This document shows positions 8,188 through 63,941 of a stretch of DNA of 64,000 bases, in pieces; position 1 is the first letter of the stretch, and the number at the start of each line of letters is the position of its first letter. Under the pieces are notes generated by a model. The model did not search any database. It had not been told where the DNA came from and saw only the letters and a list, made by a program, of their open reading frames with translations. The stretch lies in IMG/VR virus record IMGVR_UViG_3300044700_000691, positions 124,001-188,000 of that record; one strand, written 5' to 3'. The position numbers and the translations under genes are program-made.

Positions 8188-8610
8188 ATGCTTAAGAATT
8201 TTAATTCCTGGTTAACCGAACAAACTGACCCAATGTCAATGGATCCAGCGGTTGCTGCTCCGGCCGTGCCGGTGGCACCTGGCAAACCTGCTCAAATTAG
8301 AGCAATTTTAATATCAAATCCAATTGGTTCAGTCGATATGCCTGGCGATATGTCAACTAAGCAATTTAACGAATATGTTCTAGACCTCGATAGAGTTAAA
8401 GAATGGATTACTAAAAATGCAAAGGAGTCAGAACAAGAAATTTTAGACTACTTATCAGGAAAAGATATTGAAGTTAAAGACGCCCATAAAAAATTCACGA
8501 AAGCTGTACAAGCTGACGAATTTGGAAAAGCTCAAACTGTAATTGATATAGATTTTACTAAAGAAGGCGAACCTACTACCAAAGACATTAACTTAATATT
8601 TTTAGCATAA
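8188..8610 (+). CDS. Hypothetical protein with N-terminal capsid-targeting-like motif; putative internal head protein
   Basis: Starts MLKNFNSWLTE, follows a late-promoter motif, and has a Pro/Ala linker. Confidence 0.75.
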   Translation: MLKNFNSWLTEQTDPMSMDPAVAAPAVPVAPGKPAQIRAILISNPIGSVDMPGDMSTKQFNEYVLDLDRVKEWITKNAKESEQEILDYLSGKDIEVKDAHKKFTKAVQADEFGKAQTVIDIDFTKEGEPTTKDINLIFLA

Positions 8611-9272
8611 TGCAGCTAAGTGAACTTTCACAAAATATAACTAACGATATCTTTCGGTTAATTCAGCAAAATGTTGGAAAACCCGAAAGATATCGTTCTT
8701 TTGATTTAGAATACAAAGATCCAATTTATTTTGACTTAAAGGTCAATATTAAGATTACTGATACTCTGCATCCAACTAAGGACCTATATTTTAAAACAGT
8801 TCCGTCTGAGGTCTTAAAATTTGAAAAGTTTGGATTTGCAATAGATGGAGATTCATTTGGTGGAGATAATGAAGATGGAGCCGAGATTGAAATTTCAGTT
8901 GCAGTTGACCAAACCCAAATTAATTCACCTAAACTTAAAGCCCGAATTCTTGATGTTGCTCGACACGAAGTTGAACACATTTTACAAAGAGGTCCTAACT
9001 TTTCACTAGATCACAAAGTTAAAATACCTAGACCCATAACTAGGGAACTTGCAAAATCCAACTATCGATATTTTATCCTAAGCGACGAAATACCTGCACA
9101 GGTTAGAGGACTTGCAGAAGAGGCTCAGCTATCTGGCCAAACTGTAAAAGAGTGTGCAATTGAATACCTAACCCCATTCCTAGAATTAGGATTTATTACC
9201 CAGAAAGAAATTGAAATGGTTCTTACTACATGGCAAGCCTGGGCATCTCAACATAATATTAAATTCGAGTAA
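8610..9272 (+). CDS. Hypothetical protein with HExxH (possible zinc metallopeptidase)
   Basis: ARHEVEHILQ followed by YFILSDEIPAQ (candidate third ligand Glu). Start overlaps the previous stop (TAATG). Confidence 0.6.
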   Translation: MQLSELSQNITNDIFRLIQQNVGKPERYRSFDLEYKDPIYFDLKVNIKITDTLHPTKDLYFKTVPSEVLKFEKFGFAIDGDSFGGDNEDGAEIEISVAVDQTQINSPKLKARILDVARHEVEHILQRGPNFSLDHKVKIPRPITRELAKSNYRYFILSDEIPAQVRGLAEEAQLSGQTVKECAIEYLTPFLELGFITQKEIEMVLTTWQAWASQHNIKFE

Positions 9273-9299
9273 AACTTTGGCAGTTTATTGGGTAAAATA
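9271..9299 (+). promoter_or_regulatory. Putative early/middle promoter AAAAC-N16-GTAAAATA
   Basis: Upstream of gp32; matches the recurring bipartite motif. Confidence 0.6.
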
Positions 9300-9330
9300 T
9301 CTATAATAAACTTAAAAAACCAAAGAAACA

Positions 9331-10359
9331 ATGGATTTATTCAATTTAAACACCGATGACTTTACCGCGCCGAAAGCCGGCACCGCACGTAGCGTAGATG
9401 AAAACCTCTACAACCCTGGACCAGATCAAGCTCAAAATGGAGTTTACCGTTCAGTAATCAGATTTATTCCTTGGATCGGGGATCCAGCTAAGAGTAAATA
9501 CAAGAAGTATTATGCTCGACTAACAAACCCGTTGACAGGCGAAAGATTTACACTAGACTGCCCATCTTCACTAGGCAAACCGTCTATCTTATGGACGCTT
9601 GATTTAGAGCTTCGTAAATTAGCAAACGAAGAACCTGAAATCGTAAAAGAGATTCAAAAGAATTTCATGAGAGCTTACAATTATTACTCTCTTGTTTACA
9701 TTAAGAAAGACCCTCAGTTTCCACAACTTGAAGGCAAAATTAAAGTGTATAGCTTTGGCTACAATATTGATAATTTGATCCAACAAGAGTTAAACCCAGA
9801 AGCAGAATTGATGAACATTAGAAAAATCAATCCTTATTCTATGCTTGAAGGAAAAGACATGGTACTTGTAGTAAAACGTAAAACTAAGAGCTGGAGAGAT
9901 TACTCTTCTTCTAAATTTATGTCAGAAACAAGCCCATTAATCTTAAAATTAGATGATGGTCGCGAACTTCCAGTAAATGGCGAAGAAAAGGTTCAAACCT
10001 ACGTAAAAGGATTCTTGGAGAAAAACTCTCCAGATTTGAGTCAGTACTTCTACAAAGAGTGGTCAGATTCAGACTATGAGAAAGTTGCAGAATTTATTAA
10101 AGCAATTATTCCTCATAAATCTATTCTTGATCAAGTTTTAGCAAACACAAGAGATGAGAGAATTAAACCTTATTTCTCAGCGATTAAATCAGCTCAACCC
10201 GTAAACAGAGTAGTAGCAGATGATTTAGATTTTGCTGCGCCAGCTAAACCAATTGCAAACAATGCGTTTGATGATTTTGATGCTCCAACACAAGCACCAG
10301 CTGCTCCAGTGAAAGCTGCTCCATCAAATGACTTTGACGATCTATTAGCAGATCTTTAA
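9331..10359 (+). CDS. gp32: Single-stranded DNA-binding protein (T4 gp32 family)
   Basis: VIRFIP, DCPSSLG, YYSLVYIKKDPQFPQLEGKIKVY, NPYSMLEG, and acidic tail ending DFDDLLADL. Confidence 0.9.
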   Translation: MDLFNLNTDDFTAPKAGTARSVDENLYNPGPDQAQNGVYRSVIRFIPWIGDPAKSKYKKYYARLTNPLTGERFTLDCPSSLGKPSILWTLDLELRKLANEEPEIVKEIQKNFMRAYNYYSLVYIKKDPQFPQLEGKIKVYSFGYNIDNLIQQELNPEAELMNIRKINPYSMLEGKDMVLVVKRKTKSWRDYSSSKFMSETSPLILKLDDGRELPVNGEEKVQTYVKGFLEKNSPDLSQYFYKEWSDSDYEKVAEFIKAIIPHKSILDQVLANTRDERIKPYFSAIKSAQPVNRVVADDLDFAAPAKPIANNAFDDFDAPTQAPAAPVKAAPSNDFDDLLADL

Positions 10360-10380
10360 TCTTTAAAATAATTTAAATAC

Positions 10381-27185: not shown

Positions 27186-27764
27186 TTATTCTTCGTCTTC
27201 GTCAGTTAATTCTTCCGACTCGTCCTCTTCTGGCATTTCTGCAACTCTTTGAATAGCTGCTTTAAATATTTCAACACATTCGTCTTTTTCGATTTCCATT
27301 TTTTCGCAAGCAATTTCTAAAATTTCTTTTAGTTCATCACTAAACTCTTCCATAAACATTTCAAGAGCTTCTTCGTCGATTTCTGGAGTTTCTTCTATTT
27401 CAGTGTCTTTAATTTCTTCGTCTTCTTCAAACATATAGTTTTCAAATTGAGGAACATGACTTTCTTTTACTATTGTAACGCCCATTGCTGGAGTCGTATT
27501 TAAAGGTTCTTCGATTTTAATCTTAGCTGCACGACTTGGTACATCACTATTAAAAGCTTTCCAATAACTATCGTTATTATGATTCTTTCCGCCATTTTCA
27601 AAGTTAGCGTCTCTTTTTGCAATATTAGTCCATTCTTTTAAAGACTTTCTTTTAGATTTATCAAATGACTCAGTTTCGTTAGGTCCACCAAACGACGGAG
27701 CCTTTATATCCATAAATCTTTTAAAGTCTTTAACAGCGCTGCTTTTTAGGTTAAAAATATCCAT
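27186..27764 (-). CDS. Acidic hypothetical protein; putative internal head/core protein
   Basis: Follows the tail tube gene. Carries VKDFKRFM and VPQFENYMFEE motifs and has a very acidic C-terminal half. Confidence 0.75.
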   Translation of the reverse strand: MDIFNLKSSAVKDFKRFMDIKAPSFGGPNETESFDKSKRKSLKEWTNIAKRDANFENGGKNHNNDSYWKAFNSDVPSRAAKIKIEEPLNTTPAMGVTIVKESHVPQFENYMFEEDEEIKDTEIEETPEIDEEALEMFMEEFSDELKEILEIACEKMEIEKDECVEIFKAAIQRVAEMPEEDESEELTDEDEE

Positions 27765-29591: not shown

Positions 29592-30077
29592 TTATGCTTG
29601 TGGTTTTTCTCCTCTAAAGGCTTTACCTTTATTGGAATCTTTTCTTTCTGGATCAACTGTTTTATAGTTTGCCCAAATTTCATTGTATATTCGACAGCTT
29701 GCTCCCATAAAATTAATAATGCCGACAAATTTCTTACGATCATCGCCAGTCATCTTGGAAACTTTTCTTCCAATACGTCGAGCATCGTCAAGATCTAATT
29801 CTTCTTCGTCATCTTTACCAACTAATTCTTTAAGAGAATTTCTTTTCTTTTCATTTAGTTGAATAAAAGACTCAAACGTCATTGATCTTGAGTCTTCAGC
29901 ATATGCTGACTCATGGTCAGCTGCATATGATTCAAATCGATCAAGCTCGTCGCCAGTCATTAGACCAGTTGCATACATAACAAATCTTTCATAAAGATCT
30001 GCTCTTTCCTGCATAGGAATACCTGCTTCATCCATATATTGAATTATGCTAGGAGGTACGCTTAGTGTAATCCTCAT
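29592..30077 (-). CDS. Hypothetical protein with internal capsid-targeting-like motif
   Basis: SMTFESFIQLNE-KKR in mid-protein. Confidence 0.75.
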   Translation of the reverse strand: MRITLSVPPSIIQYMDEAGIPMQERADLYERFVMYATGLMTGDELDRFESYAADHESAYAEDSRSMTFESFIQLNEKKRNSLKELVGKDDEEELDLDDARRIGRKVSKMTGDDRKKFVGIINFMGASCRIYNEIWANYKTVDPERKDSNKGKAFRGEKPQA

Positions 30078-30088: not shown

Positions 30089-30442
30089 TTATTTTTGTTT
30101 GCTAGCCATCTTAGGATCAACTGACTTAGTGATAGCTGTACCTTTAATAACTAATTTGCCAAATGCTGGATCAACTGACTTAGTGATAGCTTTACCTTTA
30201 GGCGCAGCTTCTGCTAAGTTTTGGTTAACAGACTTAGTGATTTTAGCACCTTTAGCGGCTTTAAGATCAGTCATTTTAGTGTCAACTGATTTTTTAATGC
30301 TAGAACCTTTAGGCATATCTAATTTAGCCATTTTAGGATCAACGCTTTTTCCTAATCTAGAACCTGCAGCAGGCATAGATGCTAAGTTTTGGTTAACTTT
30401 TTCAGTTAGGAATTCTGTGTAAGACAATACTTGGTTTGCCAT
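30089..30442 (-). CDS. Basic Lys/Ala-rich repeat protein; putative DNA-condensing internal protein
   Basis: N-terminal VLSYTEFLTE, then six 17-19-aa KSV(D/N)-type repeats. An exact 24-bp duplicate lies at 30114-30137 and 30168-30191. Confidence 0.8.
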   Translation of the reverse strand: MANQVLSYTEFLTEKVNQNLASMPAAGSRLGKSVDPKMAKLDMPKGSSIKKSVDTKMTDLKAAKGAKITKSVNQNLAEAAPKGKAITKSVDPAFGKLVIKGTAITKSVDPKMASKQK

Positions 30443-30676: not shown

Positions 30677-32266
30677 CTAAGCAACATACTCACCAGTTAA
30701 GTGTTTAACACCCGTTGCATTAGCACCGTCAACAATATTAAATTGTACGTACTGAGTTTGTGGATGCCATCCAGCTTCAACTAGAGCATATCTTGACTTC
30801 ATTCCGATTTTCGGAGAGAATGTACCCTCTGAAATAGTTTGAAGAGATTCAGCCATGATGTAAGGCATGAATTTAAGTCCTGGCTCTTCGTCAGCACCTT
30901 TACGTCCGATAAGAACAGTGTTGTTATCAAAACGTAAGTTTGGATCAACATAGATAGTTAAACCGTGAACTTTACCAGCAGGGTAAAGAGTTCCAGCAGT
31001 AGAACCTAAATCATTGTTGAATGGAGCGATTGAATAACCAGCAGCATCAGCCATAGCAGATGCAACTTTAGCAGAAACTACTGCGAAAGTACCAGCTCCG
31101 AAACGAGCTCTGTGATAAATTAAGTTAGCAGATTCAAGAATCTTAGTAACTAATTTTCTTTGAGAAGTCGTTACGTTTTCAAAAGTACCAGAACCTGGTT
31201 GAACGTTAACGTTAGCAACATAACCTTCAGTTGCGTTAGCAAGTGTAGCATTAGTTGTAGCTAAGTTTTTAACTTTAGAAACGATTTCTTTGTTGATTGT
31301 TTGAGCAAGCTCATTAACAGCAACGTTCTCCAACATAGAGATTGCATCGAAATTCCAAACTCTGTTAAGATCTTGGATTTGTTCAACAGTTGCAGAGATA
31401 GAAACTTGAGAAGTTTTAGCCTCAACGAACTTAGTAAACATTTTAAGACCCATTTGACGGAATTTAGAACCTTCACCAGCTGCTCTATCCATAGATTGAG
31501 TATACTCATTTCCAGAAAGGAAAGGACCAGAGAAATCTGTGTGAGCTTCAGTTGAAGTCGAAGTGAATCCAGAGATGTGGTTTTCTAAAGCAGATACTAA
31601 ATCAACTTTGTTAGCCGCATCTAAAGTTACACTGTTTAACACTTTACCAGCACCTAAGTAAGTAGCTAAAGTGATAGAATCATCAGAAGTAACTACTTTG
31701 AAGATCAATTGACCGTCAATACGTGAAGCACCTACGAATTGTAGTGTAAGTACTGCAGCTGTTCCAGCTCCATCACCATCAACTGTGTACTCAGTACCAG
31801 CTGTGAATGTAGCCTTTTCACCTGTAGTGAAATCAGCGATTTTGATCAAATATGGTTCGAATTCAGTACCTAAGTTACCACCTTGGTAAACATAATCTAG
31901 GTAAGGAAGGAAACCAACTGGAGAGTCCATAGGAACTACACCAACTAGGTCGAAACCAATTGTTTTTGCTGCTACTTGAATAGCAACTGGCAATAAACTT
32001 GGGAATTTATCACCTGAACCGTTTGCACCTGTTGTAGGAGCTAATGGGTTACCGATTCCACTGATAGAACCTGGTTGTTGATAGAATAAGCCTGGAGCAA
32101 CTGTAGCTTCATTGATTGAACCTGCGTTTTCGAACATTGCGTGATAGTGGCAATAATCTACTAACCAAGGACGTGAATCTGCGTTTACACCATAGCTTTC
32201 TAAAACTGGAGCCCAAGTTGACTTAATCGAAGAATCGTTTAGTCTTTTAAATACTTTTGTAGACAT
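30677..32266 (-). CDS. gp23: Major capsid protein (gp23-like)
   Basis: KSTWAPVLE, IGFDLVGVVPMDSPVG, ELAQTINKEI, GAGTFAVVSAKVASA, YMPYI-like FMPYI and KIGMKSRYAL. Confidence 0.95.
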   Translation of the reverse strand: MSTKVFKRLNDSSIKSTWAPVLESYGVNADSRPWLVDYCHYHAMFENAGSINEATVAPGLFYQQPGSISGIGNPLAPTTGANGSGDKFPSLLPVAIQVAAKTIGFDLVGVVPMDSPVGFLPYLDYVYQGGNLGTEFEPYLIKIADFTTGEKATFTAGTEYTVDGDGAGTAAVLTLQFVGASRIDGQLIFKVVTSDDSITLATYLGAGKVLNSVTLDAANKVDLVSALENHISGFTSTSTEAHTDFSGPFLSGNEYTQSMDRAAGEGSKFRQMGLKMFTKFVEAKTSQVSISATVEQIQDLNRVWNFDAISMLENVAVNELAQTINKEIVSKVKNLATTNATLANATEGYVANVNVQPGSGTFENVTTSQRKLVTKILESANLIYHRARFGAGTFAVVSAKVASAMADAAGYSIAPFNNDLGSTAGTLYPAGKVHGLTIYVDPNLRFDNNTVLIGRKGADEEPGLKFMPYIMAESLQTISEGTFSPKIGMKSRYALVEAGWHPQTQYVQFNIVDGANATGVKHLTGEYVA

Positions 32267-34333: not shown

Positions 34334-34341
34334 TATTTATA
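34334..34341 (-). promoter_or_regulatory. T4 late promoter consensus TATAAATA
   Basis: Exact T4 late consensus 19 nt upstream of the protease GTG. Confidence 0.75.
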
Positions 34342-41763: not shown

Positions 41764-42483
41764 TTATCCGTGAAACGGATCGAGATCTGGATTAGGAATC
41801 ATTTTCCAGCGTCTTTCTAGGTTCATGCCTTGGCCTCTAGCTAATTGAATCTCTGTTGAGTGATCTTTAATTGCATTTAGTGCACCAATATAATCACGTC
41901 GATCAACAAACGATTGAACATAGTCAGCAACATCATCAGTTAAAGAAACTCTATAAACAACTGGATGGCGCTGTTGATTAAAGCTGCAGCGCATCATCAT
42001 CATATTTAGCTGACCATTGTATGCTTGCATTACGCTCTTTCGGGTCGGGGCAGTTTCATCAGCAAGACCTAAATCATGGATTCTATCTAATTGATTTAGG
42101 TAATTATGATCAATATTTTCTTTAGTAAAAGATTCTACACCATGACAATCTGCAATACCAAAGTACCAACTAGCTGGCTTCTTTGCTTCATTTAAAAAAG
42201 AAGAAAAGGTTAGTACTCTACTTTCAGGCAACGGCTCATTTACATCAATTAGGTCTAGATCTGCATCGCGAAGATCGTAAATCTCGTCAAAGGTTGTACC
42301 TTCGAACTCAATAGGTTCTTCTAAATCGACCATGTATAAAGTTTGATCTGGTGCATAGTCTAATCTATAGACTTTGCCAATAGTAACAATTTTATTATCA
42401 ATTGGGGCGCCTACCAGATTGAGACGGTCCATTGTATCTTTAGATAATCTAAGCTTAACTTTATCGCCGATTTCAAATGCCAT
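41764..42483 (-). CDS. Two-domain hypothetical protein (SH3/KOW-like N-domain; internal targeting-like motif)
   Basis: FEIGDKVKL at the N-terminus; RVLTFSSFLNE-AKK between the domains. Confidence 0.75.
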   Translation of the reverse strand: MAFEIGDKVKLRLSKDTMDRLNLVGAPIDNKIVTIGKVYRLDYAPDQTLYMVDLEEPIEFEGTTFDEIYDLRDADLDLIDVNEPLPESRVLTFSSFLNEAKKPASWYFGIADCHGVESFTKENIDHNYLNQLDRIHDLGLADETAPTRKSVMQAYNGQLNMMMMRCSFNQQRHPVVYRVSLTDDVADYVQSFVDRRDYIGALNAIKDHSTEIQLARGQGMNLERRWKMIPNPDLDPFHG

Positions 42484-42752: not shown

Positions 42753-43229
42753 TTACCTAGTCTTTTTGACATCTGCCCAAGATTTACTTGGACCTGCCGC
42801 ATTTACTCTAGCCATTGCCCATTGATGAGCAGTCATTCCTGGTCTGGAACCAGAAGAGTAGAATGCACCTAGACCTTTGGAATATTCTCGTTTTAAATCA
42901 GCAAACGAATAACCCTTTTTAGTAGCAACTGCCCTAATTTTAGCTAGGGTTTCTTTGCTAAGGTTAGAAGATTTTTTCTTATCCGCCTCAGTTACCTTTG
43001 AATCAGGTCTTGGCGTATTTTTCCAACCAGATTTCTTTCGTTCAGCGGCCTCCATCTCATCTCTAAGTTTATATGCAGCATCCTTTTTACCGCTATCTAA
43101 TAAACTCTTCGCTTTATCTAGCTTTTTATCTCTAGAACTTCCTTCTGGGGCTTTATATTGAGCTGGATTTTCAAGAGTCGACTTTTTCTCAAGTAAACTT
43201 ATGTATTCATTAAATGGTTTTACGTACAT
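42753..43229 (-). CDS. Conserved phage hypothetical protein with N-terminal targeting-like motif
   Basis: MYVKPFNEYISLLE at the start. C-terminal GSRPGMTAHQWAMARVN is recalled as DUF5824-like (unverified). Confidence 0.75.
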   Translation of the reverse strand: MYVKPFNEYISLLEKKSTLENPAQYKAPEGSSRDKKLDKAKSLLDSGKKDAAYKLRDEMEAAERKKSGWKNTPRPDSKVTEADKKKSSNLSKETLAKIRAVATKKGYSFADLKREYSKGLGAFYSSGSRPGMTAHQWAMARVNAAGPSKSWADVKKTR

Positions 43230-43232: not shown

Positions 43233-43520
43233 TTATGACTTTTTATTTAGTTGGCGCTTTACCTCGGCTCTAACCTTTTCCATCTTTTTAGCATAGGCTG
43301 GATTATCATTACGATTAAATACAATTTGCTGGTTAAGGCTACCTGTAATTTTTCTCATATCGCCGCCTCTAGTTTTAATTAACCATGAAGCTAAGGCTTT
43401 GATTCCAAGGCTTTTAAATCTACCATTTGCATCAGGGGCATTTGAATCGTGCCAATCTGGTGAGTTTTTGGTTTTTCTTGCCTCTGTAATAAATTCTGTG
43501 TATGTAAGTATATTATTCAT
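43233..43520 (-). CDS. Basic hypothetical protein with N-terminal targeting-like motif (start probably ATG 43520)
   Basis: MNNILTYTEFITE-ARK. Confidence 0.75.
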   Translation of the reverse strand: MNNILTYTEFITEARKTKNSPDWHDSNAPDANGRFKSLGIKALASWLIKTRGGDMRKITGSLNQQIVFNRNDNPAYAKKMEKVRAEVKRQLNKKS

Positions 43521-44066: not shown

Positions 44067-44411
44067 TTAGTATTCCTTTGGGTCTTCTTGAATTAGTTCC
44101 TTATCTTGAGAATCGTTAACTTCATTAATTAAAAAGTTAAATACCTCTTCTACGTCATCTTTTGATGTAGCAATATGGTCAGCTGCCCATGCGTGTCCGT
44201 TTTTCAAAATTTCATCAACACTAGACTCGTCCATTTCTAATAAAAGATCAACACATCTTTTAATTGTTTTAAGATTTCCAAAAAACATATAATTTTCATA
44301 TTCAGCTTCATGTGAATCTTCTTTGCTGTGTATTGGTTCAGCTGCTAGTTGAATTTGAGTTGGCTCGAAATCTTCTTGTGAAAATGATTCGAAAGTTTTA
44401 ATTTTTTGCAT
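44067..44411 (-). CDS. Hypothetical protein with N-terminal targeting-like motif
   Basis: MQKIKTFESFSQE; NGHAWAADHI. Confidence 0.75.
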   Translation of the reverse strand: MQKIKTFESFSQEDFEPTQIQLAAEPIHSKEDSHEAEYENYMFFGNLKTIKRCVDLLLEMDESSVDEILKNGHAWAADHIATSKDDVEEVFNFLINEVNDSQDKELIQEDPKEY

Positions 44412-44412: not shown

Positions 44413-46026
44413 TTACTTTTTATTTAAATTTTTATAAAAGCTAGTAAAGTCTAAAATATTTCTATTAGCTTTTTTAGATTTCTTTGGTTGAAAATTATCA
44501 CCAGAACCTGGTGAAGTTTGAGTTGGCGCAATTGGATTACCCATGCCGCCGATACTTGCTGGTGTTTGCATTGCTACACCTGGTGATGCAACATCCTCTT
44601 TAACTTGACCGGATCCAACTTTAGTTGCTCCTTTAATTTTACTTTGTGGTGCATCTAGTCCGCTTTCTGCACTTGTAAATAAGAAGCGTGTCCACTTTTC
44701 AGCTTTTAATTGAGCCTCTTTACCACCAGTCACCTTGGCAGTTCTTGAAATGGTTCTTCCAATAATAGGTAAAGTTGCTTGTCTAAATCTTGCGAGTTGA
44801 GCTCCAAGATTCTTTTGCTCTTCTCCTTGATATTCGACAGTTGCCGATAGCGTACCAAGATAGGTTCCAATCTTTAGTAGATAATTAATTCGGCTGGAGT
44901 CTAACATTTGTTTAGACGTAATTGCAATTTTAGTTCTTTCAAATAGAGGAAGCTTAATTTCTGGAGAATAGGCAACTCCCTTATAACGACTTATGTCAAG
45001 GTCAGTTTTATATTTTCCAAGACGAGTCCTTGCCTCTAAGTATGCCTCAATTGCCTCAACCATATATTGTTTCTTGGCCGAATCGTCGAGAGTCTGTAAC
45101 ATAGTTCGACGTTTTGTAATAGCATCAATTTCGCCTCGCTCATCCGTCATAATCATAATACGAACTTTTACAAATTGAGACTCTAATGTATTTAGGTCTG
45201 GCCAATTTCTAAGTTCTTCGATTGCATTTCTAATAATAACGTCACGTTTAACTAATTTCTCAGCCTTACCGCCAGTTCGCTTATTAAAATCCTCTGACGA
45301 TTTCTTGAAGTCGTCAACATCATTATCCATTTCCGTTTGAACTTCTTCCCATTCAACATCAATAATATCTGGTTCAGGCTTCTTTTTATCCTCATCTTTA
45401 TTTGAAAAGTCTGAAATAATATAGGCTACCTTTACCGAGTCTTCTGCTGTTTTTCTAAAGTCTTCAGAATCTGCAGTCGTACCATCCATTTTTTCCTTGG
45501 CAGAGCTAACTAATGTTTTAGTAACCTCAGCTTCAGTTTTCTTTTGATCAGTAAATGAAATTTTAATTTTATCAAGCAGGTCATTAACCTCGGCTGTCCA
45601 ATTGCTCTCCTCAATGGTTTGATATGCTTCCCATACAATAGCCATTCGACCTTTGTATGCTCGTATTCTCTCTAACTGTAATTCAATGTCTTCGCCATCT
45701 TTAATCATTTGATCAAGAACTTCGGTTTCAATTTTTAAAGTTTGAGAAATAAAATCAATATACTTATTTAAAATATCAATCCATTCTTTATTAAGAAAAG
45801 CTTGGCTTAATTGCTGAAGAACCTGAGGATCAGTCTTTGCCTTATTTAAAATATCATTTTCGATAAGTCTTGATAAAAACTCATCGACCTTCTTCATGAT
45901 ATCCTCCTCCTTTTTATTGGAGCCTTTGGCAAATGTGATAATATCAGAAATTTCATTTCCAATAATAATTAATTCAGATTCTAATAGAAGCTGTTCGAGG
46001 ATATGTATGTGTTTAAATTTCAGCAT
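44413..46026 (-). CDS. Large helical hypothetical protein; putative internal head protein
   Basis: N-terminal LEQLLLE-S and C-terminal NILDFTSFYKNL; 537 aa. Confidence 0.75.
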   Translation of the reverse strand: MLKFKHIHILEQLLLESELIIIGNEISDIITFAKGSNKKEEDIMKKVDEFLSRLIENDILNKAKTDPQVLQQLSQAFLNKEWIDILNKYIDFISQTLKIETEVLDQMIKDGEDIELQLERIRAYKGRMAIVWEAYQTIEESNWTAEVNDLLDKIKISFTDQKKTEAEVTKTLVSSAKEKMDGTTADSEDFRKTAEDSVKVAYIISDFSNKDEDKKKPEPDIIDVEWEEVQTEMDNDVDDFKKSSEDFNKRTGGKAEKLVKRDVIIRNAIEELRNWPDLNTLESQFVKVRIMIMTDERGEIDAITKRRTMLQTLDDSAKKQYMVEAIEAYLEARTRLGKYKTDLDISRYKGVAYSPEIKLPLFERTKIAITSKQMLDSSRINYLLKIGTYLGTLSATVEYQGEEQKNLGAQLARFRQATLPIIGRTISRTAKVTGGKEAQLKAEKWTRFLFTSAESGLDAPQSKIKGATKVGSGQVKEDVASPGVAMQTPASIGGMGNPIAPTQTSPGSGDNFQPKKSKKANRNILDFTSFYKNLNKK

Positions 46027-46663: not shown

Positions 46664-49558
46664 TTATTCTTGAGGAGCAGTTGAGAATGAATCCATGTTA
46701 AGATCTATTCCCAATAGAGAGTCAGATGAAGTAGATTTAGGTCTAATATTATTAGCCTGTTCAATCTTAAAGTATTTAAGCTGATCATCTGTAATCTTTC
46801 CGTTAATTAAAACATAGTCTCCTGTGTGTTTACTAACTGCCATAAAATATGTGCCGTCCTGTAAATATCGATCAAACTCAATCTTTAATACTCCATTTAA
46901 ATAGACACCAGTATTAAATGTACCGTCTTCTGCGATTGCACCGTTAAATACAGCAGTCAACTCATCTTTGTAGTTCTTATAGATTAGGTTGAATCCGGCT
47001 GCTAAAATTTCAACAACCTCTTCTTTAGTTGAAGCTTGAACAGCAGCTGTAATTCCTTGGCTAAAATATTCTTTTCTTGGAGTAGCAGAAGCTGATGGTG
47101 TAAATGCCGTAGAGTTTTCAAAATACTCTGGCACTTCCTGTTTAGCTGCAGTAAATAGATCGGCTAAACCTTTTCTAATATAGTTTCCAGTATCTGCTCC
47201 CATACCAGTACCGCTTTGTCCAGTTAATCTAAAATTATCTCCGCTTGATTTAATTTCAATTAAATCTGTCTTAATTTTAATATCGCCCTTATCTCTATTT
47301 CCAGCGTTTACCGCATCCTTAATTAAGATTGACATTAAAATTTCGCCGCGACCAATGTTTACATTACCAACTGACCCAATTAAATTAAAAAGCTGATCAT
47401 ATAGTGCTGGGCTAAGACCTGTCGTATCAAATAAGGTTTTTAGATTGCCGTTTGGGCTATTTGTAATATCTTCAAATGTAATAGTTGGATTATCTAAATA
47501 CACCAATAGGTCATCGTCTTGATCAAGATCGTCCGCAATTGAAACAATGGTTTTTGCTAAATCTTTATAGCCTTTACCTGTGCCGAGAATATCAAATAAC
47601 TCTTTATTTACGTCGTTATGGGTTCTCTTTAATAGTTTTTCAATCTTTTTATAGAGAGCCTCATTATATGGTGCATCAATAATTAAATCAAGCAGGTCAC
47701 TTTTCTTTTTATCAAGCTCTGCAACTGAAATCGACTCAGTTAAAAGGGATTCTTCAATCTCCTTTGTCATATTATAAAACTCTGAGTGTAGAGGCTTACT
47801 GGTTATGTTTTTATACAAAACAAAATCTTGGTTTTTAACTGAATTAACAAGCTCTGCTTCTAGTTCAATTTTAGGTACTTCTACTACCTTTAACTGAGAT
47901 GGAATTTTTGCGTATGGAGCTCTCTTATTAATACGATTTAGGTCAATTACTAAATCTGGCACAAACTCTAAGTTGGTTGCAATTGCTTTAATTGAATAAC
48001 CTTGGCCAATTGCACCAATTAATTCATCTATTCCAACTGAATCTACAGTTGAACCGCCTACTACATAATCTGAAGTTTTTGATAATCGGTCAATTGAATT
48101 TTTGACTGTTTCCGAAGACATTGGAAAAGCTGAACTTCTTTGTCCAGGGTGATACGCTACCATTAAACAAGGAACATCATACTTTCCTTTAATATTAGCT
48201 GCGATTTTTTCGTGTTCTTTACTTAGAGGTTGAAATTTATCTAGGTAAATAACGATTTCAATATCTTTTTTTTTAGTTTGATTTGCTTGAAATTGACTAA
48301 AAAAATCTGAGGCATCCTCATCTGTACCAAAAAATTGATTAAATGTTGGAAAAAATGCCTCGTTTAATTTATCCTCTGCTGCAAGTTGAACTTTAGCAAT
48401 TTGGGATTTTAGAGTTTCTTTCATAGTTTTATTAAAAAAGGTTGAGCTAACTCTAATATTTTTCTTTCTAAATGTATTTAAGAAAACTCTGTACAATTCC
48501 TTAAGAGTTTTATCTGAATCGATTAATCTAATTACCATATCATCATTGATCAAGACACGATTAACATCAAACTCCGGCTTATTTAGGAATTCTGGAGTTG
48601 TTATTTCAAGACCGCGATATTTGCTACCGTGCTCCTGTATAAAATCTTTAAATATTGCATTTATAATTTGAATATAACGTCTTTCAAATGTTGTACCATC
48701 TGGCTTAATTGCATCAAGGTCTGCTTGTGAATAGGTTTCAATAAAATTCATTAAGTCAGCTGTCATAATCCAAATGTAATCATCAGTCTTTGGTGCAGCT
48801 ACTCTGTCTTGTGCCTTTTCCTTTGCTCTTGCTTGGAAAACCGGGTCAACTAATTTTGCTAAAAATACTGAATCTTCTCCGCCTGGTTCATAGAATCTAA
48901 AAACAATACCTTCGATATCTTTGTCAGCGGTGTCTCTTAAAAAAGAGGTTCTAAGTTCAGGATTAAGAACATTAATAATGTATTTGGTAAAAGATGCAGT
49001 TTTAAATTTTCCAACTAACTCATCAAGCGGAGTATAGACAAAATCTAAAATTTTCTCTTTTTGATCATCTGTTAGTTTTCCTTGAAAAATAATTGGTGGG
49101 CGCTCGATATCTAAAATATCCGCCCATTTGTCTAATTCTGCCTTATCTTGGATAGTCTCAGCCTGTTCGCCAGCTTTATCCAATATATGAATATAACTTA
49201 GGATCAAGTGGTTTTTAGGTAATCTATCGTATTGTATTGATTGAGCAGTCGGTGAACTAAAATACTCCATTCCAAAATGATAGTTACATGGAAGTTTTTC
49301 AATTGAGTCAGCCGATAATTCATCGAAGTGTTTAAGTGCAGGGTTATAGTATGAACTTAGGACACGATCTACACCTGTTAATTTAGTATTACGTTTAAAA
49401 AATTCAAATGGTTCTTCGGAATTTCCACAATTTCTTTGTGCACCAAAAAATGCACCGTCCATTTTTTCGTTAACAATAACTTCTTTATTAAGAAGAGCCT
49501 CTAAAAATTCTTTGCCCTTTTTTTCGTAAATGTCCTTTAAGTGGTTTAGTCCTGCCAT
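46664..49558 (-). CDS. Multidomain protein: Rnl2-like nucleotidyltransferase/ligase + degenerate HxGH NTase + PD-(D/E)xK nuclease-like
   Basis: EKMDG (motif I), FGMEY, IEGIVFR (IV), LAKLVDP (V); YLDKFQPLSKEHEKI; GRGEIL..GDIKI..IEIKS. Confidence 0.7.
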   Translation of the reverse strand: MAGLNHLKDIYEKKGKEFLEALLNKEVIVNEKMDGAFFGAQRNCGNSEEPFEFFKRNTKLTGVDRVLSSYYNPALKHFDELSADSIEKLPCNYHFGMEYFSSPTAQSIQYDRLPKNHLILSYIHILDKAGEQAETIQDKAELDKWADILDIERPPIIFQGKLTDDQKEKILDFVYTPLDELVGKFKTASFTKYIINVLNPELRTSFLRDTADKDIEGIVFRFYEPGGEDSVFLAKLVDPVFQARAKEKAQDRVAAPKTDDYIWIMTADLMNFIETYSQADLDAIKPDGTTFERRYIQIINAIFKDFIQEHGSKYRGLEITTPEFLNKPEFDVNRVLINDDMVIRLIDSDKTLKELYRVFLNTFRKKNIRVSSTFFNKTMKETLKSQIAKVQLAAEDKLNEAFFPTFNQFFGTDEDASDFFSQFQANQTKKKDIEIVIYLDKFQPLSKEHEKIAANIKGKYDVPCLMVAYHPGQRSSAFPMSSETVKNSIDRLSKTSDYVVGGSTVDSVGIDELIGAIGQGYSIKAIATNLEFVPDLVIDLNRINKRAPYAKIPSQLKVVEVPKIELEAELVNSVKNQDFVLYKNITSKPLHSEFYNMTKEIEESLLTESISVAELDKKKSDLLDLIIDAPYNEALYKKIEKLLKRTHNDVNKELFDILGTGKGYKDLAKTIVSIADDLDQDDDLLVYLDNPTITFEDITNSPNGNLKTLFDTTGLSPALYDQLFNLIGSVGNVNIGRGEILMSILIKDAVNAGNRDKGDIKIKTDLIEIKSSGDNFRLTGQSGTGMGADTGNYIRKGLADLFTAAKQEVPEYFENSTAFTPSASATPRKEYFSQGITAAVQASTKEEVVEILAAGFNLIYKNYKDELTAVFNGAIAEDGTFNTGVYLNGVLKIEFDRYLQDGTYFMAVSKHTGDYVLINGKITDDQLKYFKIEQANNIRPKSTSSDSLLGIDLNMDSFSTAPQE

Positions 49559-51222: not shown

Positions 51223-51226
51223 ATGA

Positions 51227-51234
51227 AATAAATA
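51227..51234 (+). promoter_or_regulatory. Late promoter-like AATAAATA
   Basis: 25 nt before TTG 51260; divergent from and overlapping the opposite promoter region. Confidence 0.4.
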
Positions 51235-51246
51235 ACTTTGAAATAA

Positions 51247-51275
51247 TATTATACTAAAATTGAACTTAGAGTTTA
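51247..51275 (-). promoter_or_regulatory. Putative early/middle promoter TAAAC-N16-GTATAATA
   Basis: Upstream of the HAD-kinase pair. Confidence 0.6.
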
Positions 51276-53780: not shown

Positions 53781-54559
53781 TTAATATGACCGTCTGCAAC
53801 TTCCTCTTCTAAAAAATCTAGAAAATACTGCTTTGCATTTTGCTCAAATTCTCTGTGTTGACGTTGGATTGACTTAAGATCATCTTCAATCTGTTCAAGT
53901 TTAGAGTATTCTGCCTTAAACCATTTAATAGATTCAGTTAATTTATCAGTAATATCCTTTACTGCGTCTTCATCTTCAACTAAACCAAGTTCAGCAAGAC
54001 GTTTCCATTCAGCACTATTAATTGCATTAGCAACGTCTGCAATAGTTTCTTCATCGTAATATTCTTTAGTATCTAAATATTCCTGAATGGTTTCTTCAGC
54101 GTATTCTAATAGACGATCTGCTCCATTATCTGGTGAAAGGTGAATCCAACCGCCGCTATTGCCGCCCCAACCAACATGTCCAACCCAATCATAAGATTGT
54201 TCAATGTCTTCTTGGAACATTTCGGCTTGGTCCTGTAGCCATCTATACCAAATATCAGAGAGTCTTTCTTCGTCCAGCTCTATGCCAACCTTTGCCAAAA
54301 CCTCTTCATTATCTGGCGAATTATAAACCTTTACGTTTAGGGCAAAAAAGTCTCCATTGTATTGATTACGACCTCTGTTTAGATTCCAACCATCTGAAAA
54401 TATCGAATCGATCTTGGCCTCAAATAATTCTAGTTTTTCAAGTAAGTCCTTTTCCAACCAAAAATCTCCAAGCTGCTCTGTATAAAAGGCAACTAGCGAA
54501 TTATTATTTGCCTTTACGTATTCTCTACTAAAATTTTCAAATAGTTTAATATGTTTCAT
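53777..54559 (-). CDS. Acidic hypothetical protein with N-terminal targeting-like motif
   Basis: MKHIKLFENFSRE; GWGGNSGGW. Confidence 0.75.
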   Translation of the reverse strand: MKHIKLFENFSREYVKANNNSLVAFYTEQLGDFWLEKDLLEKLELFEAKIDSIFSDGWNLNRGRNQYNGDFFALNVKVYNSPDNEEVLAKVGIELDEERLSDIWYRWLQDQAEMFQEDIEQSYDWVGHVGWGGNSGGWIHLSPDNGADRLLEYAEETIQEYLDTKEYYDEETIADVANAINSAEWKRLAELGLVEDEDAVKDITDKLTESIKWFKAEYSKLEQIEDDLKSIQRQHREFEQNAKQYFLDFLEEEVADGHIN

Positions 54560-54560: not shown

Positions 54561-55013
54561 TTATTCTACTCGACCATCATTTCCATCCATTGCATCATGC
54601 ACTGAATTTAAATTGTCCAGGGATGTAGTTAATTGAGAATACATCCAAGACTCTAGTTGCTCGCCTTTAGCCATTCGGTCTTTAATCATATTTGCATAGT
54701 CTGCAATTCTTTCAAGTTGGCCAAATGTCATTTCATTTAATTCAGCTAGGGTATCTCTGCCCTCTGCTTTATTTGTAAATTCTTCAAAAAGAAGTATTGA
54801 AGATTCATTAACTGGTTGGTAAGCTAAGGTTTTGGTTTTTTCTTTAACCGCAGTAGATTTAATTTGTGTAGTTTGACCTTGAGACACCTTAACCGCTAAT
54901 TCTGTAACCTTGTCTCTAATCGCACAAATTTTTTGATAGTCCCGTTTAGTTATCTGAGTCGTTGATTCGTTAATTGTAGACAAATAGGTTAAAAACTGGT
55001 CGATTTGCGACAT
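54561..55013 (-). CDS. Hypothetical protein (start probably ATG 55013)
   Basis: MSQIDQFLTYLSTINE-S and internal ILLFEEFTN. C-terminal QLERIADYA..LESWMYSQLT is a pattern recalled from T4-like head-region proteins. Confidence 0.72.
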   Translation of the reverse strand: MSQIDQFLTYLSTINESTTQITKRDYQKICAIRDKVTELAVKVSQGQTTQIKSTAVKEKTKTLAYQPVNESSILLFEEFTNKAEGRDTLAELNEMTFGQLERIADYANMIKDRMAKGEQLESWMYSQLTTSLDNLNSVHDAMDGNDGRVE

Positions 55014-61200: not shown

Positions 61201-61217
61201 TTTTTATATCGAGTCCG

Positions 61218-61595: not shown

Positions 61596-61596
61596 A

Positions 61597-62331: not shown

Positions 62332-62350
62332 GCAGTTTGCGTTATTTTAA

Positions 62351-62578
62351 TTAGGCAGTTGGTGCCTGTGCAGCAGCCATTTTAGCAGCTTCTGCTTTCT
62401 TTTTATCCTCTTCGGTTTTTGCAGCAGTAGCATCAGCAATTTTTAATTTAATTGCATCAAGTTCTTTTTGAGAATCTAGTACCTTTTGCATAGCAGTTGC
62501 TTCTTGTTGGTTTAACGCAACTAGGTCTGCTGAAGCATCTTCATTTAGACCAAAGTAGTTTTGAAATGACTTAATCAT
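62351..62578 (-). CDS. Small coiled-coil protein with N-terminal targeting-like motif
   Basis: MIKSFQNYFGLNE-DA; late promoter 20 nt upstream. Confidence 0.75.
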   Translation of the reverse strand: MIKSFQNYFGLNEDASADLVALNQQEATAMQKVLDSQKELDAIKLKIADATAAKTEEDKKKAEAAKMAAAQAPTA

Positions 62579-62597
62579 TTTATTGTAGTTCTTTTTG

Positions 62598-63941
62598 TTA
62601 TTTATCGGAAATATAGTCCGAAAAAGTTTTTATACGGGTTGTGCCAGAACCAGGATTTGCTCCAAGTTCTTGACGACTTGCTTTATATGAACCCCATTGA
62701 GATGGTACGCGAATAGTTCCGGAAACTCGTTGTGGATTTCTTTCCGGTTGCAGGTCATCCATATCTGGATTGCTTTTCGTGCGGTCTCTGAATAACTCTG
62801 GTGTTAGCAGGTCCTCTTCAATCTTTCCACCTAATATCATCCATACCTTTTTAGGGTCCTTTCCTTCAGGGATCCCCTGTGAAAAGCTATCAAAGTCTTG
62901 TGCTAACCAAAACTCTCTCATTAGAGTGCCAGATACGCCATCTTCATCTCCGTCTGCACCAGAGTTTCCTCCAAATTCAGGGCGTTCAGTTTCTATTCTA
63001 TTAATTTTAGAAATTGAGCCTTGCCATTTTTCCATAGCAGCCCATCTGGGCATATCCTCATCTGTAGCATAAAGATTAACTACCGTATTTGGTGCATATT
63101 GTGTTTGGCCAAGAGCTTCAACAAATTCATATCCACTTCTGACTGGAGTAACGTTTGATAGGTGCAATTCAACATTATCAAAGTCTTCTAAATAGTAATC
63201 TAATACATCCATTGCAGATTTGCCGCTAATTCCAGCCATTTCTGTCTTGGAAATAAACACATGTACCTCGTCGTTTTCTTCTGCAATTTTTGCAATTGCA
63301 TCATAGTGACCGGCATGTGGTGGTTTAAATTTACCACTAAATATTCCGACGGTTTTAATATTTAATTTTGGAACTTGAGTACGACCAATTTTTCTGGTCT
63401 TCATTGTAATTTCTGCAAACTCAGTCTCTAGACTCTTTGCAAGTGCTAGGTTTTTGCGATCATCATCATAAAAAGTAAAATGAGTAAAGCCTTTTGCCAT
63501 TAGTTTACGAAAGGCTTCTTTTTTCTTTTCTGCAATAGTGCCGTCGAATCCAAATTCTGGATCACTTACTGCATAAATTAGGTTGGGGTGAATATCTATA
63601 CCGTGGGATAATAGAAATTCTCTGACTAGTTTCTTATTATCTCTAGCTGTAATAATCCCGACAGCAGTCCCGGATTCGTATGCAGAACGTAATATGTTAA
63701 GTACCCATTCAACTAATCTTCCAGCCTTTAAAATATTAGCATCATTGAATTGGGTATAGTTAACCTCATGATGAGGTTCCTTTTCATAATCGTTAAACTC
63801 CTGTGGAGTAAGATCAAATTTCTCGCCAGTCAAGGCATCCTTAACAAGGATCTTTGCATTGGTAACAACTAGCGTGTCATCCAAATCAAATACGATAATT
63901 GAATTGTCTCTAGAAAATGCCATTTCGTTTACTGTTTGCAC
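62598..63941 (-). CDS. HAD phosphatase fused to HxGH nucleotidyltransferase (cytidylyltransferase/NMNAT-like fold)
   Basis: IVFDLDDTL..IITAR..KK..FYDDD, then IFSGKFKPPHAGH..SGTLMR; C-terminal RIKTFSDYISDK. Confidence 0.8.
   Translation of the reverse strand: MQTVNEMAFSRDNSIIVFDLDDTLVVTNAKILVKDALTGEKFDLTPQEFNDYEKEPHHEVNYTQFNDANILKAGRLVEWVLNILRSAYESGTAVGIITARDNKKLVREFLLSHGIDIHPNLIYAVSDPEFGFDGTIAEKKKEAFRKLMAKGFTHFTFYDDDRKNLALAKSLETEFAEITMKTRKIGRTQVPKLNIKTVGIFSGKFKPPHAGHYDAIAKIAEENDEVHVFISKTEMAGISGKSAMDVLDYYLEDFDNVELHLSNVTPVRSGYEFVEALGQTQYAPNTVVNLYATDEDMPRWAAMEKWQGSISKINRIETERPEFGGNSGADGDEDGVSGTLMREFWLAQDFDSFSQGIPEGKDPKKVWMILGGKIEEDLLTPELFRDRTKSNPDMDDLQPERNPQRVSGTIRVPSQWGSYKASRQELGANPGSGTTRIKTFSDYISDK
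62599..62606 (-). promoter_or_regulatory. Late promoter-like GATAAATA
   Basis: 20 nt upstream of ATG 62578. Confidence 0.6.

What the first reader, a model, noticed from the sequence alone, without database searches (positions are those of the whole stretch)
8188..63941. About 15 proteins share a capsid-targeting-like peptide at N-terminal, internal and C-terminal positions: a large packaged cargo system
Seen at N-termini: MLKNFNSWLTE (8188), VLSYTEFLTE (30442), VKPFNEYISLLE (43229), ILTYTEFITE (43520), KIKTFESFSQE (44411), IGNFKQFLNE (50074), HIKLFENFSRE (54559), IKSFQNYFGLNE (62578). Seen internally: MTFESFIQLNE (gene 29592-30077), VLTFSSFLNE (41764-42483), VPQFENYMFEE (27186-27764), FPTFNQFF (46664-49558), ILLFEEFTN (54561-55013). 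Seen at C-termini: ILDFTSFYKNL (44413-46026) and RIKTFSDYISDK (62598-63941). Established: T4 internal proteins use an N-terminal MKTYQEFIAE tag and gp21 cleaves after (I/L)-x-E. Most of these genes follow late-promoter motifs. Inference: the phage loads and probably injects a large, partly enzymatic protein payload, using a position-independent tag that may dock on the scaffold. Internal tags followed by L-N-E sites suggest proteolytically processed polyproteins.
Basis: partly seen in the sequence, partly recalled or inferred. Interest (0 to 1): 0.85.

Follow-up and report, generated by a model that had tools for sequence, protein, structure and literature searches.

The report
Capsid-targeting tags on phage cargo proteins
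An uncultured T4-related jumbo phage puts the same short peptide, very like the T4 "capsid targeting sequence", on about 15 unrelated proteins at their start, middle or end, which probably marks them for loading into the head and trimming by the head protease.

Summary
All 15 peptides translate as stated. The motif is Φ-x-x-[FY]-x-x-[FYW]-Φ, and in 13 of 15 cases E follows at +6 or +8. It gives 15 hits at 12 bits or more, against 0.5 in shuffled proteomes.

The window comes from an uncultured jumbo myophage with a T4-type head module: a Gp23-family capsid protein, an S77/gp21 protease and a gp20-like portal. The tags are conserved in relatives down to about 57% capsid identity. A stricter version, IKTFESFxxE, is N-terminal in 48 of 57 matches in IMG/VR.

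The conserved positions are the ones that mutagenesis of T4 IPIII found to matter: residues 4 and 7 for targeting, 8 and 10 for cleavage.

Position independence is supported by comparison. One cargo domain carries the tag upstream in some phages and downstream in others. Another orthologue ends exactly at the tag.

Each repeat holds Y-x-x-Y-[LIV]-A-E, the same core as the tags.

Packaging, cleavage and injection are inferred, not shown. This is a new variant of a known kind.

The parts
8191..8223 (+). N-terminal tag LKNFNSWLTE of gene 8188-8610 (acidic 140-aa protein next to the nrd genes)
   Evidence: ATAAATA 26 nt upstream
30398..30430 (-). N-terminal tag VLSYTEFLTE of gene 30089-30442. This is a basic Lys-rich protein with KSVDPKM repeats, immediately downstream of the capsid gene, and is a likely major internal protein.
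   Evidence: conserved in nearly all relatives; best match in the proteome to the protease repeat unit, 16 bits; mature pI 10.3
43191..43223 (-). N-terminal tag VKPFNEYISLLE of gene 42753-43229 (basic, DUF5824)
43479..43511 (-). N-terminal tag ILTYTEFITE of gene 43233-43520 (basic). Among the window's tags it is closest to T4 MKTYQEFIAE.
   Evidence: (relatives have a stop just upstream of MNNIL)
44370..44402 (-). N-terminal tag IKTFESFSQE of gene 44067-44411 (acidic)
   Evidence: the same domain family has the tag downstream of the domain in L147, L149 and L158
50027..50059 (-). N-terminal tag IGNFKQFLNE of gene 49574-50074
   Evidence: ATAAATA 29 nt upstream
54518..54550 (-). N-terminal tag IKLFENFSRE of gene 53777-54559 (acidic, 10 [LI]xE sites)
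62543..62575 (-). N-terminal tag IKSFQNYFGLNE of gene 62351-62578
   Evidence: ATAAATA 27 nt upstream
29853..29885 (-). Internal tag MTFESFIQLNE in gene 29592-30077, between an acidic N part and a basic C part
   Evidence: Conserved at about aa 65-75 in relatives that lack the Met, so it is not an alternative start
42184..42216 (-). Internal tag VLTFSSFLNE in gene 41764-42483, with VNE upstream
   Evidence: top non-N-terminal hit
27423..27455 (-). Internal tag VPQFENYMFEE in gene 27186-27764 (the weakest case)
   Evidence: Conserved only in closer relatives; not among the top 16 non-N-terminal hits (all 8.2 bits or more) of the N-terminal-trained PSSM
48320..48352 (-). Internal tag FPTFNQFFGTDE in the linker of the 964-aa protein 46664-49558. 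The protein has an RNA-ligase-like N half, a HUP nucleotidyltransferase-like domain and a PD-(D/E)xK-like C part.
   Evidence: Tag columns invariant in homologues of 41-99% identity; AF2 linker 396-431 disordered; folds
54765..54797 (-). Internal tag ILLFEEFTNKAE in gene 54561-55013, with VNE upstream
   Evidence: Orthologues in L088, L094 and L095 end right after the tag
44425..44457 (-). C-terminal tag ILDFTSFYKNL of gene 44413-46026 (no E after it)
44491..44616 (-). Segment of gene 44413-46026 (aa 471-512) that copies the capsid protein's predicted maturation site and N-arm (aa 47-88)
   Evidence: Local alignment score 112 against 40.8 +/- 6.1 for shuffles
62601..62633 (-). C-terminal tag IKTFSDYISDK of gene 62598-63941 (HAD/PNK-like phosphatase plus HxGH nucleotidyltransferase). 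D at +6.
   Evidence: conserved in orthologues
32284..34314 (-). Prohead protease gene: an S77/gp21-like domain plus a long scaffold-like C-terminal extension
   Evidence: hhalign to T4 gp21, 95.5%; no separate scaffold gene between it and the capsid gene
32947..33408 (-). Eleven tandem 14-residue repeats (aa 303-456), each with the core Y-x-x-Y-[LIV]-[AG]-E, which is the same as the tags
   Evidence: TRF period 42/84; 7-11 per relative; predicted long helix, low confidence
30677..32266 (-). Major capsid protein, Gp23 family; predicted maturation site ...GSINE|A
34334..34340 (-). ATAAATA late-promoter-like motif 26 nt upstream of the protease start. The same motif, with the same spacing, lies before 8188, 15393, 28373, 46621, 50074, 55630, 62578 and 63941.
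   Evidence: 10 of 26 copies lie within 60 nt upstream of a same-strand start (3% expected)

Best explanation
The peptides are capsid-targeting and processing tags of the T4 CTS type, used by a distant, uncultured jumbo relative of T4.

Each tag is a short segment with hydrophobic residues at -3 and +4 and aromatic residues at 0 and +3, spaced as on one face of a helix.

1. Inferred: during head assembly the tag docks its protein onto the scaffolding core. In this phage the core is probably built by the helical, repeat-bearing C-terminal extension of the protease gene product.
2. Inferred: once the Gp23-type shell has closed, the S77 protease cuts after the Glu at +6 or +8. Those sites ([LI]-[TN]-E) resemble the capsid protein's own predicted site (INE).
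3. N-terminal tags are then removed.
4. Internal tags lie in linkers, and 4 of 5 have a second [LIVM]-x-E just upstream. They would be excised, splitting a precursor into two packaged proteins.
5. C-terminal tags lack the Glu. They either stay on or are removed at a site further upstream.
6. The 11 scaffold repeats each carry a cleavage site and would be cut into pieces of about 14 residues that leave the head.

Shown here: the motif, its enrichment, its conservation, its variable position among orthologues, and the T4-type head genes. Inferred from T4: docking, cleavage, retention in the head and ejection into the host.
For: - Head module: Gp23 Pfam 9e-48, Peptidase_S77 2e-12, hhalign to T4 gp21 95.5% with the H and S motifs invariant, and a gp20-like portal.
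- Enrichment and frame specificity.
- E at +6 or +8 in 13 of 13 non-C-terminal tags.
- The review PMC9026906 reports that in the IPIII CTS residues 4 and 7 govern targeting and residues 8 and 10 govern processing. Those are exactly the conserved aromatic 0, aromatic +3, hydrophobic +4 and E +6 here. It also reports that Asp at position 10 blocks processing but not targeting. The C-terminal tag of 62598-63941 has D at +6.
- The window PSSM scores the N-termini of T4 ipI, ipII and ipIII at 10.9-11.1 bits.
- Tags are conserved in relatives of 57-100% capsid identity. Their codons vary, so selection acts on the protein.
- The IMG/VR scan for IKTFE[ST]FxxE gave 57 matches. 48 are at an N-terminus, in about 30 distinct proteins, mostly on contigs that carry homologues of window genes.
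- Position varies among orthologues.
- The tag of the 964-aa protein is invariant in its homologues and lies in a disordered linker.
- Tag-like repeats are present in the protease extension of every relative examined.
- T4 internal proteins co-purify with the scaffold protein gp22.
- No tags in 11 replication or metabolism proteins.
Against: - There are no virion data. The lineage has no cultured member in the phage collection (best capsid match 40%).
- LR756500.1, the nearest deposited genome, has the protease repeats but no tags within 41 kb of its capsid gene.
- Tenacibaculum phage PTm1 has neither this tag nor this repeat.
- Individual internal hits are not significant by score alone.
- A PSSM built from the protease repeats picks out only one tag, 30089. 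The tag-repeat link therefore rests on a core of four positions.
- The extension shows no detectable homology to T4 gp22.
- Both AF2 models have low confidence.
Confidence: 0.8

Rival explanations
1. The tag marks components of the prohead core that are built in and then degraded, like T4 gp22, gp67 and gp68, rather than cargo that is kept and injected. The 'payload' would then be mostly temporary scaffold.
For: - Several tag proteins are small and acidic (pI 4.2-4.9).
- 53777-54559 has 10 [LI]xE sites against 5.5 expected, and the protease extension has 21 against 11.
- The tag core is the repeat unit of the scaffold-like extension.
Against: - Three tag proteins are strongly basic, like T4 internal proteins.
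- Two are large multi-domain enzymes with intact-looking catalytic motifs (KxDG ligase motif, HxGH, DxDxT). That makes little sense for disposable scaffold.
- Most cargo bodies have a near-expected density of [LI]xE sites.
Confidence: 0.25
2. The motif is an extended recognition element (P7-P1) of the protease. Tagged proteins would be captured by binding the protease itself, not the scaffold.
For: - The same Ar-x-x-Ar-Φ-x-E core precedes cleavage-type Glu residues in the tags, in the 11 repeats of the protease's own extension, and at the T4 gp23 maturation site, where the propeptide ends FGSFLTE.
Against: - C-terminal tags have no Glu yet are conserved.
- In T4, targeting (residues 4 and 7) and processing (residues 8 and 10) are genetically separable, and internal proteins co-purify with gp22.
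- The window's own capsid site (GSINE) has no aromatic pair directly before it.
Confidence: 0.12
3. The peptide is a short linear motif for another hub, for example the phage DnaJ protein encoded next to the protease or a replication clamp. It would have nothing to do with the capsid.
For: - A J-domain protein (Pfam DnaJ, 1e-24) lies directly upstream of the protease gene.
- Motifs that work at either end or inside a protein are typical of hub-binding peptides.
Against: - No replication protein carries the motif.
- The invariant Glu at +6 or +8 and the match to the T4 CTS determinants are not explained.
- The genes cluster with head genes behind late-type motifs.
Confidence: 0.04
4. The motif is a chance or compositional effect, for example AT-rich codons at gene starts.
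For: The genome is 35% G+C. K, I, N, F and Y are common at N-termini.
Against: - Shuffles, six-frame controls, internal and C-terminal copies, and conservation with varied codons all argue against it.
- So does the N-terminal position of 48 of 57 matches in IMG/VR.
Confidence: 0.01

Closest known systems
T4 capsid targeting sequence of IPI, IPII, IPIII and Alt (Mullaney and Black 1996; reviews PMC9026906, PMC3012670)
   Same: - A peptide of about 10 residues on otherwise unrelated proteins.
- Aromatic residues at positions 4 and 7, a hydrophobic residue at 8 and Glu at 10.
- An L/I-x-E site for an S77 protease.
- A Gp23-type shell.
- Cargo that includes basic DNA-binding-like proteins and enzymes.
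   Different: - At least 15 tagged proteins in 64 kb, against 3 IPs plus Alt in T4.
- Seven tags are internal or C-terminal.
- Internal tags are flanked by sites on both sides.
- The scaffold-like part of the protease gene carries 11 tag-like repeats.
- The usual consensus is IK[TSL]F..F rather than KTYQEF.
- The lineage is uncultured and has jumbo genomes (contigs up to 271 kb).
Propeptides of head and ejection proteins of phiKZ-like giant phages (SPN3US, 201phi2-1; PMC5694885)
   Same: Many internal head proteins are loaded through removable propeptides and cut after Glu by a related prohead protease. The payload is large and partly enzymatic.
   Different: In those phages the propeptides are 100 or more residues long and share no common short motif. 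The protease is of the S80 type and cuts at S/A/G-x-E. Here the tag is short and shared, and the protease matches S77 better (2e-12 against 6.5e-9).
Encapsulin cargo-loading peptides and microcompartment encapsulation peptides (from established knowledge; not tested here)
   Same: Short, transferable peptides, often amphipathic, that can sit at either end of a cargo protein or between its domains and load it into a protein shell. The encapsulin shell has the same HK97 fold as phage capsids.
   Different: Those peptides bind the shell protein directly and are not removed by a protease. There is no sequence relationship.
Protease-scaffold fusions and nested genes (lambda C/Nu3, P2 gpO, herpesvirus UL26/UL26.5; from established knowledge)
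   Same: A protease domain is followed by a scaffold-like helical part in one reading frame. A Met that is invariant within a variable linker (Met236) could give a nested scaffold product.
   Different: In T4 itself gp21 and gp22 are separate genes. Tandem repeats of 14 residues, each with a cleavage site and a tag-like core, have not to my knowledge been described.

Membership tests
T4-type CTS / internal-protein system | Head built from a Gp23-family capsid protein and matured by a gp21-type (S77) serine protease | tested here: met
   Pfam Gp23 9e-48, Peptidase_S77 2e-12. hhalign to T4 gp21 95.5%. The DHP and SSRAAG columns are invariant in 18 orthologues.
T4-type CTS / internal-protein system | Short shared peptide whose residues 4 and 7 (aromatic) determine targeting | tested here: met
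   Aromatic residues at 0 and +3 in 15 of 15 tags. The T4 determinants are taken from PMC9026906. T4 IPs score 10.9-11.1 bits with the window PSSM.
T4-type CTS / internal-protein system | Peptide ends in the protease site L/I-x-E (residues 8-10) | tested here: met
   E at +6 or +8 in 13 of 13 non-C-terminal tags. Nine of these sites are [LI]-x-E (LTE twice, ITE, LLE, LNE five times); the others are SQE, SRE, MFE and TDE. One tag has E at both +6 and +8 and is counted at +6. The tag of 54561-55013 ends KAE at +8 and is outside these counts.
T4-type CTS / internal-protein system | Tag is N-terminal | tested here: not met
   8 tags are N-terminal, 5 internal and 2 C-terminal. This is the main departure from T4.
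T4-type CTS / internal-protein system | Tagged proteins are found in proheads and virions, lose the tag, and enter the host | not testable with these tools
   No cultured member and no proteome. The best deposited capsid match is 40%.
T4-type CTS / internal-protein system | Tag is transferable to foreign proteins | tested here: inconclusive
   Natural 'transfers' were seen. The same tag occurs on unrelated proteins, and on either side of the same domain in different phages. No experiment was possible.
phiKZ-like inner-body / ejection-protein system | S80 protease, S/A/G-x-E sites, long unrelated propeptides | tested here: not met
   The S80 hit is weaker than the S77 hit. The tags are 10-12 residues long and shared. 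Only 2 of 13 sites are S-x-E.
T4 gp22 scaffold family (for the protease extension) | Detectable homology to gp22 | tested here: not met
   hhalign probability 0.4%. Calling the extension scaffold-like rests on its position, its predicted long helix and its cleavage-site repeats.

The most novel reading that the evidence does not exclude
The tag is a single copy of the repeat unit of the scaffold. Cargo would enter the head by inserting one Ar-x-x-Ar-Φ-x-E helix among the 11 equivalent units of the protease/scaffold rod. The protease would then dissolve scaffold and tags at the same kind of site. This would explain how the T4 CTS docks, which is still unknown. It would also explain why the tag works at any position, and it would allow packaged proteins to be predicted from sequence across a large lineage of uncultured jumbo phages.
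Probability: 0.3. Interest if true: 0.8.

Novelty: new variant of a known kind. Interest (0 to 1): 0.62.

Why it matters
It extends the T4 capsid-targeting principle to a widespread, uncultured lineage of jumbo phages. It also shows by comparison that such a tag can act from the start, the middle or the end of a protein.

Proteins likely to be carried in the head can then be predicted from sequence alone. Here these are RNA-ligase-like, phosphatase/nucleotidyltransferase and nuclease-like enzymes, which are candidates for early counter-defence, together with basic DNA-associated proteins.

The tag-like repeats in the scaffold part of the protease gene give a testable idea of what the CTS binds to. 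A short tag that works at any position could also broaden the use of phage heads as protein carriers.

Tried and rejected
- Megablast of 22 kb against deposited phages found nothing.
- LR756500.1, the nearest deposited relative, showed no tag enrichment near its capsid gene and no N-terminal Ar-x-x-Ar-Φ peptides.
- A 14-column PSSM of the protease repeats finds only the tag of 30089-30442 (16 bits). The other tags do not score, so the tags are not simple copies of the repeat.
- Profile comparison of the protease extension with T4 gp22 gave no homology. A short resemblance (YLAENLDKGI against WLAENKLAVDKGI) is anecdotal.
- The exact T4 late promoter TATAAATA occurs 3 times against 9.5 expected.
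- Sequence searches of PDB with the 964-aa and 239-aa cargo proteins found nothing. The 447-aa protein gave only weak PPAT hits.
- The head region of Tenacibaculum phage PTm1 has no window-type tags, and its protease extension has different W-rich repeats. It cannot serve as a proteomic proxy.
- AF2 of the protease (pLDDT 51) and of the 964-aa protein (pLDDT 56) is good only for secondary structure and domain limits. Foldseek E-values are weak, 1e-3 to 1e-2.
- An apparent hit in 50692-51363 (aa 38) lies upstream of the likely true start and was dropped.
- The idea that internal tags are alternative starts was rejected, because relatives keep the tag without a Met or another start codon.

Full report
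**What the window is.** The window has 35% G+C, no tRNA genes and no close match among deposited phages.

Family searches identify these genes:
- a T4-type major capsid protein at 30677-32266 (Pfam Gp23, 9e-48);
- a prohead protease at 32284-34314 (Peptidase_S77, the gp21 family);
- a gp20-like portal at 59445-61154;
- a head-closure protein and an adaptor, a contractile sheath at 12181-15393, and a baseplate hub;
- a T4-like replication set: a split family-B polymerase, UvsX, a gp41-like helicase, gp46/47-like nuclease subunits, primase, a UvsW-like helicase, thymidylate synthase and NrdAB.

The best deposited capsid matches are huge uncultured phages (LR756500.1, 40%) and the Lak megaphages (33%). 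IMG/VR holds many relatives with 57-100% capsid identity, on contigs of up to 271 kb. One 217-kb contig is identical to the window. The window is therefore part of an uncultured jumbo myophage that is distantly related to T4.

**Check of the observation.** Aligned on the first aromatic residue (position 0), the motif is [ILV] at -3, [FY] at 0, [FYW] at +3 and a mostly hydrophobic residue at +4.
- A loose regex gives 24 hits against 5.7 +/- 2.6 in shuffles.
- A PSSM gives 15 hits at 12 bits or more against 0.5 in shuffles.
- 15 of 17 six-frame hits lie in real coding frames.
- Glu follows at +6 or +8 in all 13 N-terminal and internal tags, and in neither C-terminal tag. The background frequency of Glu is 0.069.
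- The tags use varied codons, so the constraint is on the protein and not on a DNA repeat.
- No hit occurs in 11 replication or nucleotide-metabolism proteins (5,057 aa).
- The 10 kb beyond the right end of the window has no tags.

A PSSM trained only on the N-terminal tags ranks the internal and C-terminal claims 1, 2, 5, 6, 8 and 11 among 18,225 positions, with false positives in between. Those cases need the further evidence given below.

**Conservation.**
- The gene directly after the capsid gene keeps its tag throughout the lineage, for example VLSYEEYLFEKK and VLNYNEFLLEKK.
- The internal tag of 29592-30077 is kept at the same place in relatives that have no Met there, so it is not a hidden start.
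- The C-terminal tag of 62598-63941 is conserved while the sequence before it drifts.
- The tag columns of the 964-aa protein are invariant in homologues down to 41% identity in the searched C-terminal half. They lie in a segment that AF2 leaves disordered between two folded domains.
- A scan of IMG/VR for DNA encoding IKTFE[ST]FxxE found 57 matches. 48 sit at an N-terminus, usually as MK[HY]IKTFESF[LIV]NE, in about 30 distinct proteins. Most of these contigs carry homologues of window genes at 23-66% identity. The tag is thus a hallmark of a broad lineage.

**Position independence.**
- The domain of gene 44067-44411 has the tag at its N-terminus in the window, in L164 and in L172. In L147, L149 and L158 the same domain comes first and the tag follows it, ahead of a further module.
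- The orthologue of 54561-55013 ends right after the tag in L088, L094 and L095. In the window a 55-residue domain follows the tag.
- Four of the five internal tags also have a [LIVM]-x-E within 11 residues upstream. The background rate is 0.16, which gives p of about 0.003. This fits excision of the tag and release of two products.

**Comparison with T4.** I fetched T4 (NC_000866, positions 1-135000) rather than relying on memory.
The window PSSM scores them at 10.9-11.1 bits.
- According to the review PMC9026906, in the IPIII CTS residues 4 and 7 matter for targeting and residues 8 and 10 for processing. Asp at position 10 blocks processing but not targeting. Those four positions are exactly the conserved positions here.
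- The C-terminal tag of 62598-63941 has Asp at +6.
- The same review gives L/I-X-E as the gp21 site and notes that internal proteins co-purify with gp22.
- The window's capsid protein has a predicted maturation site, GSINE|A, of the same type as the tag ends.

The protease gene encodes 676 residues. After the S77 domain come 11 tandem repeats of 14 residues (aa 303-456). Their consensus is [GSV]-I-x-Y-[ST]-[END]-Y-[LIV]-[AG]-E-[NK]-[LV]-x-x. They are visible as a 42/84-nt tandem repeat in the DNA.
- Each unit has the tag core, aromatic-x-x-aromatic-hydrophobic-x-Glu.
- One unit (VIDYSDYLAEKVEQ) is close to the tag of 30089-30442 with its four following residues (VLSYTEFLTEKVNQ). That tag is the best match to the repeat profile in the whole proteome, at 16 bits.
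- Every relative examined has 7-11 such units, and LR756500.1 has 4.
- AF2 predicts a long helix here, with low confidence, followed by a better-defined helical C-terminal domain.
- No separate scaffold gene lies between the protease and capsid genes. The extension probably plays the scaffold role, although it has no detectable homology to gp22.
- A Met that is invariant within a variable linker (aa 236) may give a nested scaffold product.

The other tags do not match the repeat profile beyond the four-position core. The idea that cargo docks by mimicking a scaffold repeat is therefore a hypothesis, to which I give about 0.3.

**Cargo.**
- After tag removal, three products are strongly basic (pI 10.1-10.7). 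These include the Lys-rich repeat protein encoded next to the capsid gene. Five products are acidic.
- The 964-aa protein has an RNA-ligase-like N half (Pfam RNA_ligase, a KxDG motif, Foldseek hits to RNA ligases). It also has a HUP-type nucleotidyltransferase-like domain and a C part with an invariant pattern that looks like PD-(D/E)xK.
- 62598-63941 combines a HAD/PNK-like phosphatase with an HxGH nucleotidyltransferase. In other phages the phosphatase stands alone without a tag.
- The tail of 44413-46026 copies the capsid protein's maturation site and N-arm before its C-terminal tag.

**Expression.** ATAAATA, which is 7 of the 8 bases of the T4 late promoter, lies 24-29 nt upstream of nine genes. 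These are four tag genes, the first genes of the two tag operons (46621 and 55630), the sheath gene, 27786-28373 and the protease gene. A tenth copy lies 12 nt upstream of the head-closure gene at 58255, giving 10 of 26 copies near a start where 3% is expected. Late expression is plausible but not shown.

**Verdict.** This is a capsid-targeting and processing tag of the T4 kind, in a new and widespread variant. It is used on many more proteins than in T4, at any position in the chain, and is mirrored by repeats in the scaffold-like part of the protease. Packaging, cleavage and injection remain inferences from T4.

Noticed in passing
window 33607-33609 (-), codon 236 of the protease gene: A Met that is invariant in 19 orthologues lies inside an otherwise variable linker, just before the helical extension. 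It may be a nested start giving a separate scaffold protein, as in lambda C/Nu3.
   Followed up: partly
window 34385-35239 (-): A DnaJ homologue (J domain 1e-24, weak DnaJ_C hit) is encoded directly upstream of the protease gene. It may be a phage co-chaperone for head assembly.
   Followed up: partly
window 16057-17436 (+) and 55705-57135 (+): The family-B DNA polymerase is split into two genes 38 kb apart. They match positions 71-493 and 499-839 of the same PHROG profile.
   Followed up: no
window 44491-44616 (-): The C-terminal tail of the 537-aa protein copies the capsid protein's predicted cleavage site and N-arm (score 112 against 41 +/- 6 for shuffles). It could be a way to bind the shell lattice.
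   Followed up: partly
L082:18966-19130 (T4 gene 61.1) and L084:4945-6510 (T4 gene 23): The uncharacterised 54-aa T4 protein gp61.1 starts with MKTFKEFIKE, which is CTS-like and scores 12.4 bits. The T4 gp23 propeptide ends with FGSFLTE, the same core as the tags, directly at its maturation site.
   Followed up: no
window 43525-44052 (-): This 175-aa protein has no tag but has 8 [LI]-x-E sites (1.8 expected), all in its first 80 residues, ahead of a basic C part. It may be another processed core or internal protein. It is conserved (35-74% identity) in many contigs of the lineage.
   Followed up: partly
window 55016-55630 (-), aa 22-33: NFPFQDFQIEAEE is a degenerate tag-like peptide near the N-terminus, conserved in close relatives. 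It scores below threshold and could be a sixteenth instance.
   Followed up: no
window 28409-29587 (-) and 30089-30442 (-): Both genes contain short peptide repeats: QKPGLPAV three times in the first, and [IT]-K-KSVD-[PT]-KM about five times in the basic protein encoded next to the capsid gene.
   Followed up: no
L187:13231-14925 (Tenacibaculum phage PTm1 ORF-300): The PTm1 protease also has a long C-terminal extension with tandem repeats, but of a different W-rich type with LSE sites. A repeat-bearing protease extension may be common in these jumbo T4-like phages, with a lineage-specific repeat sequence.
   Followed up: partly
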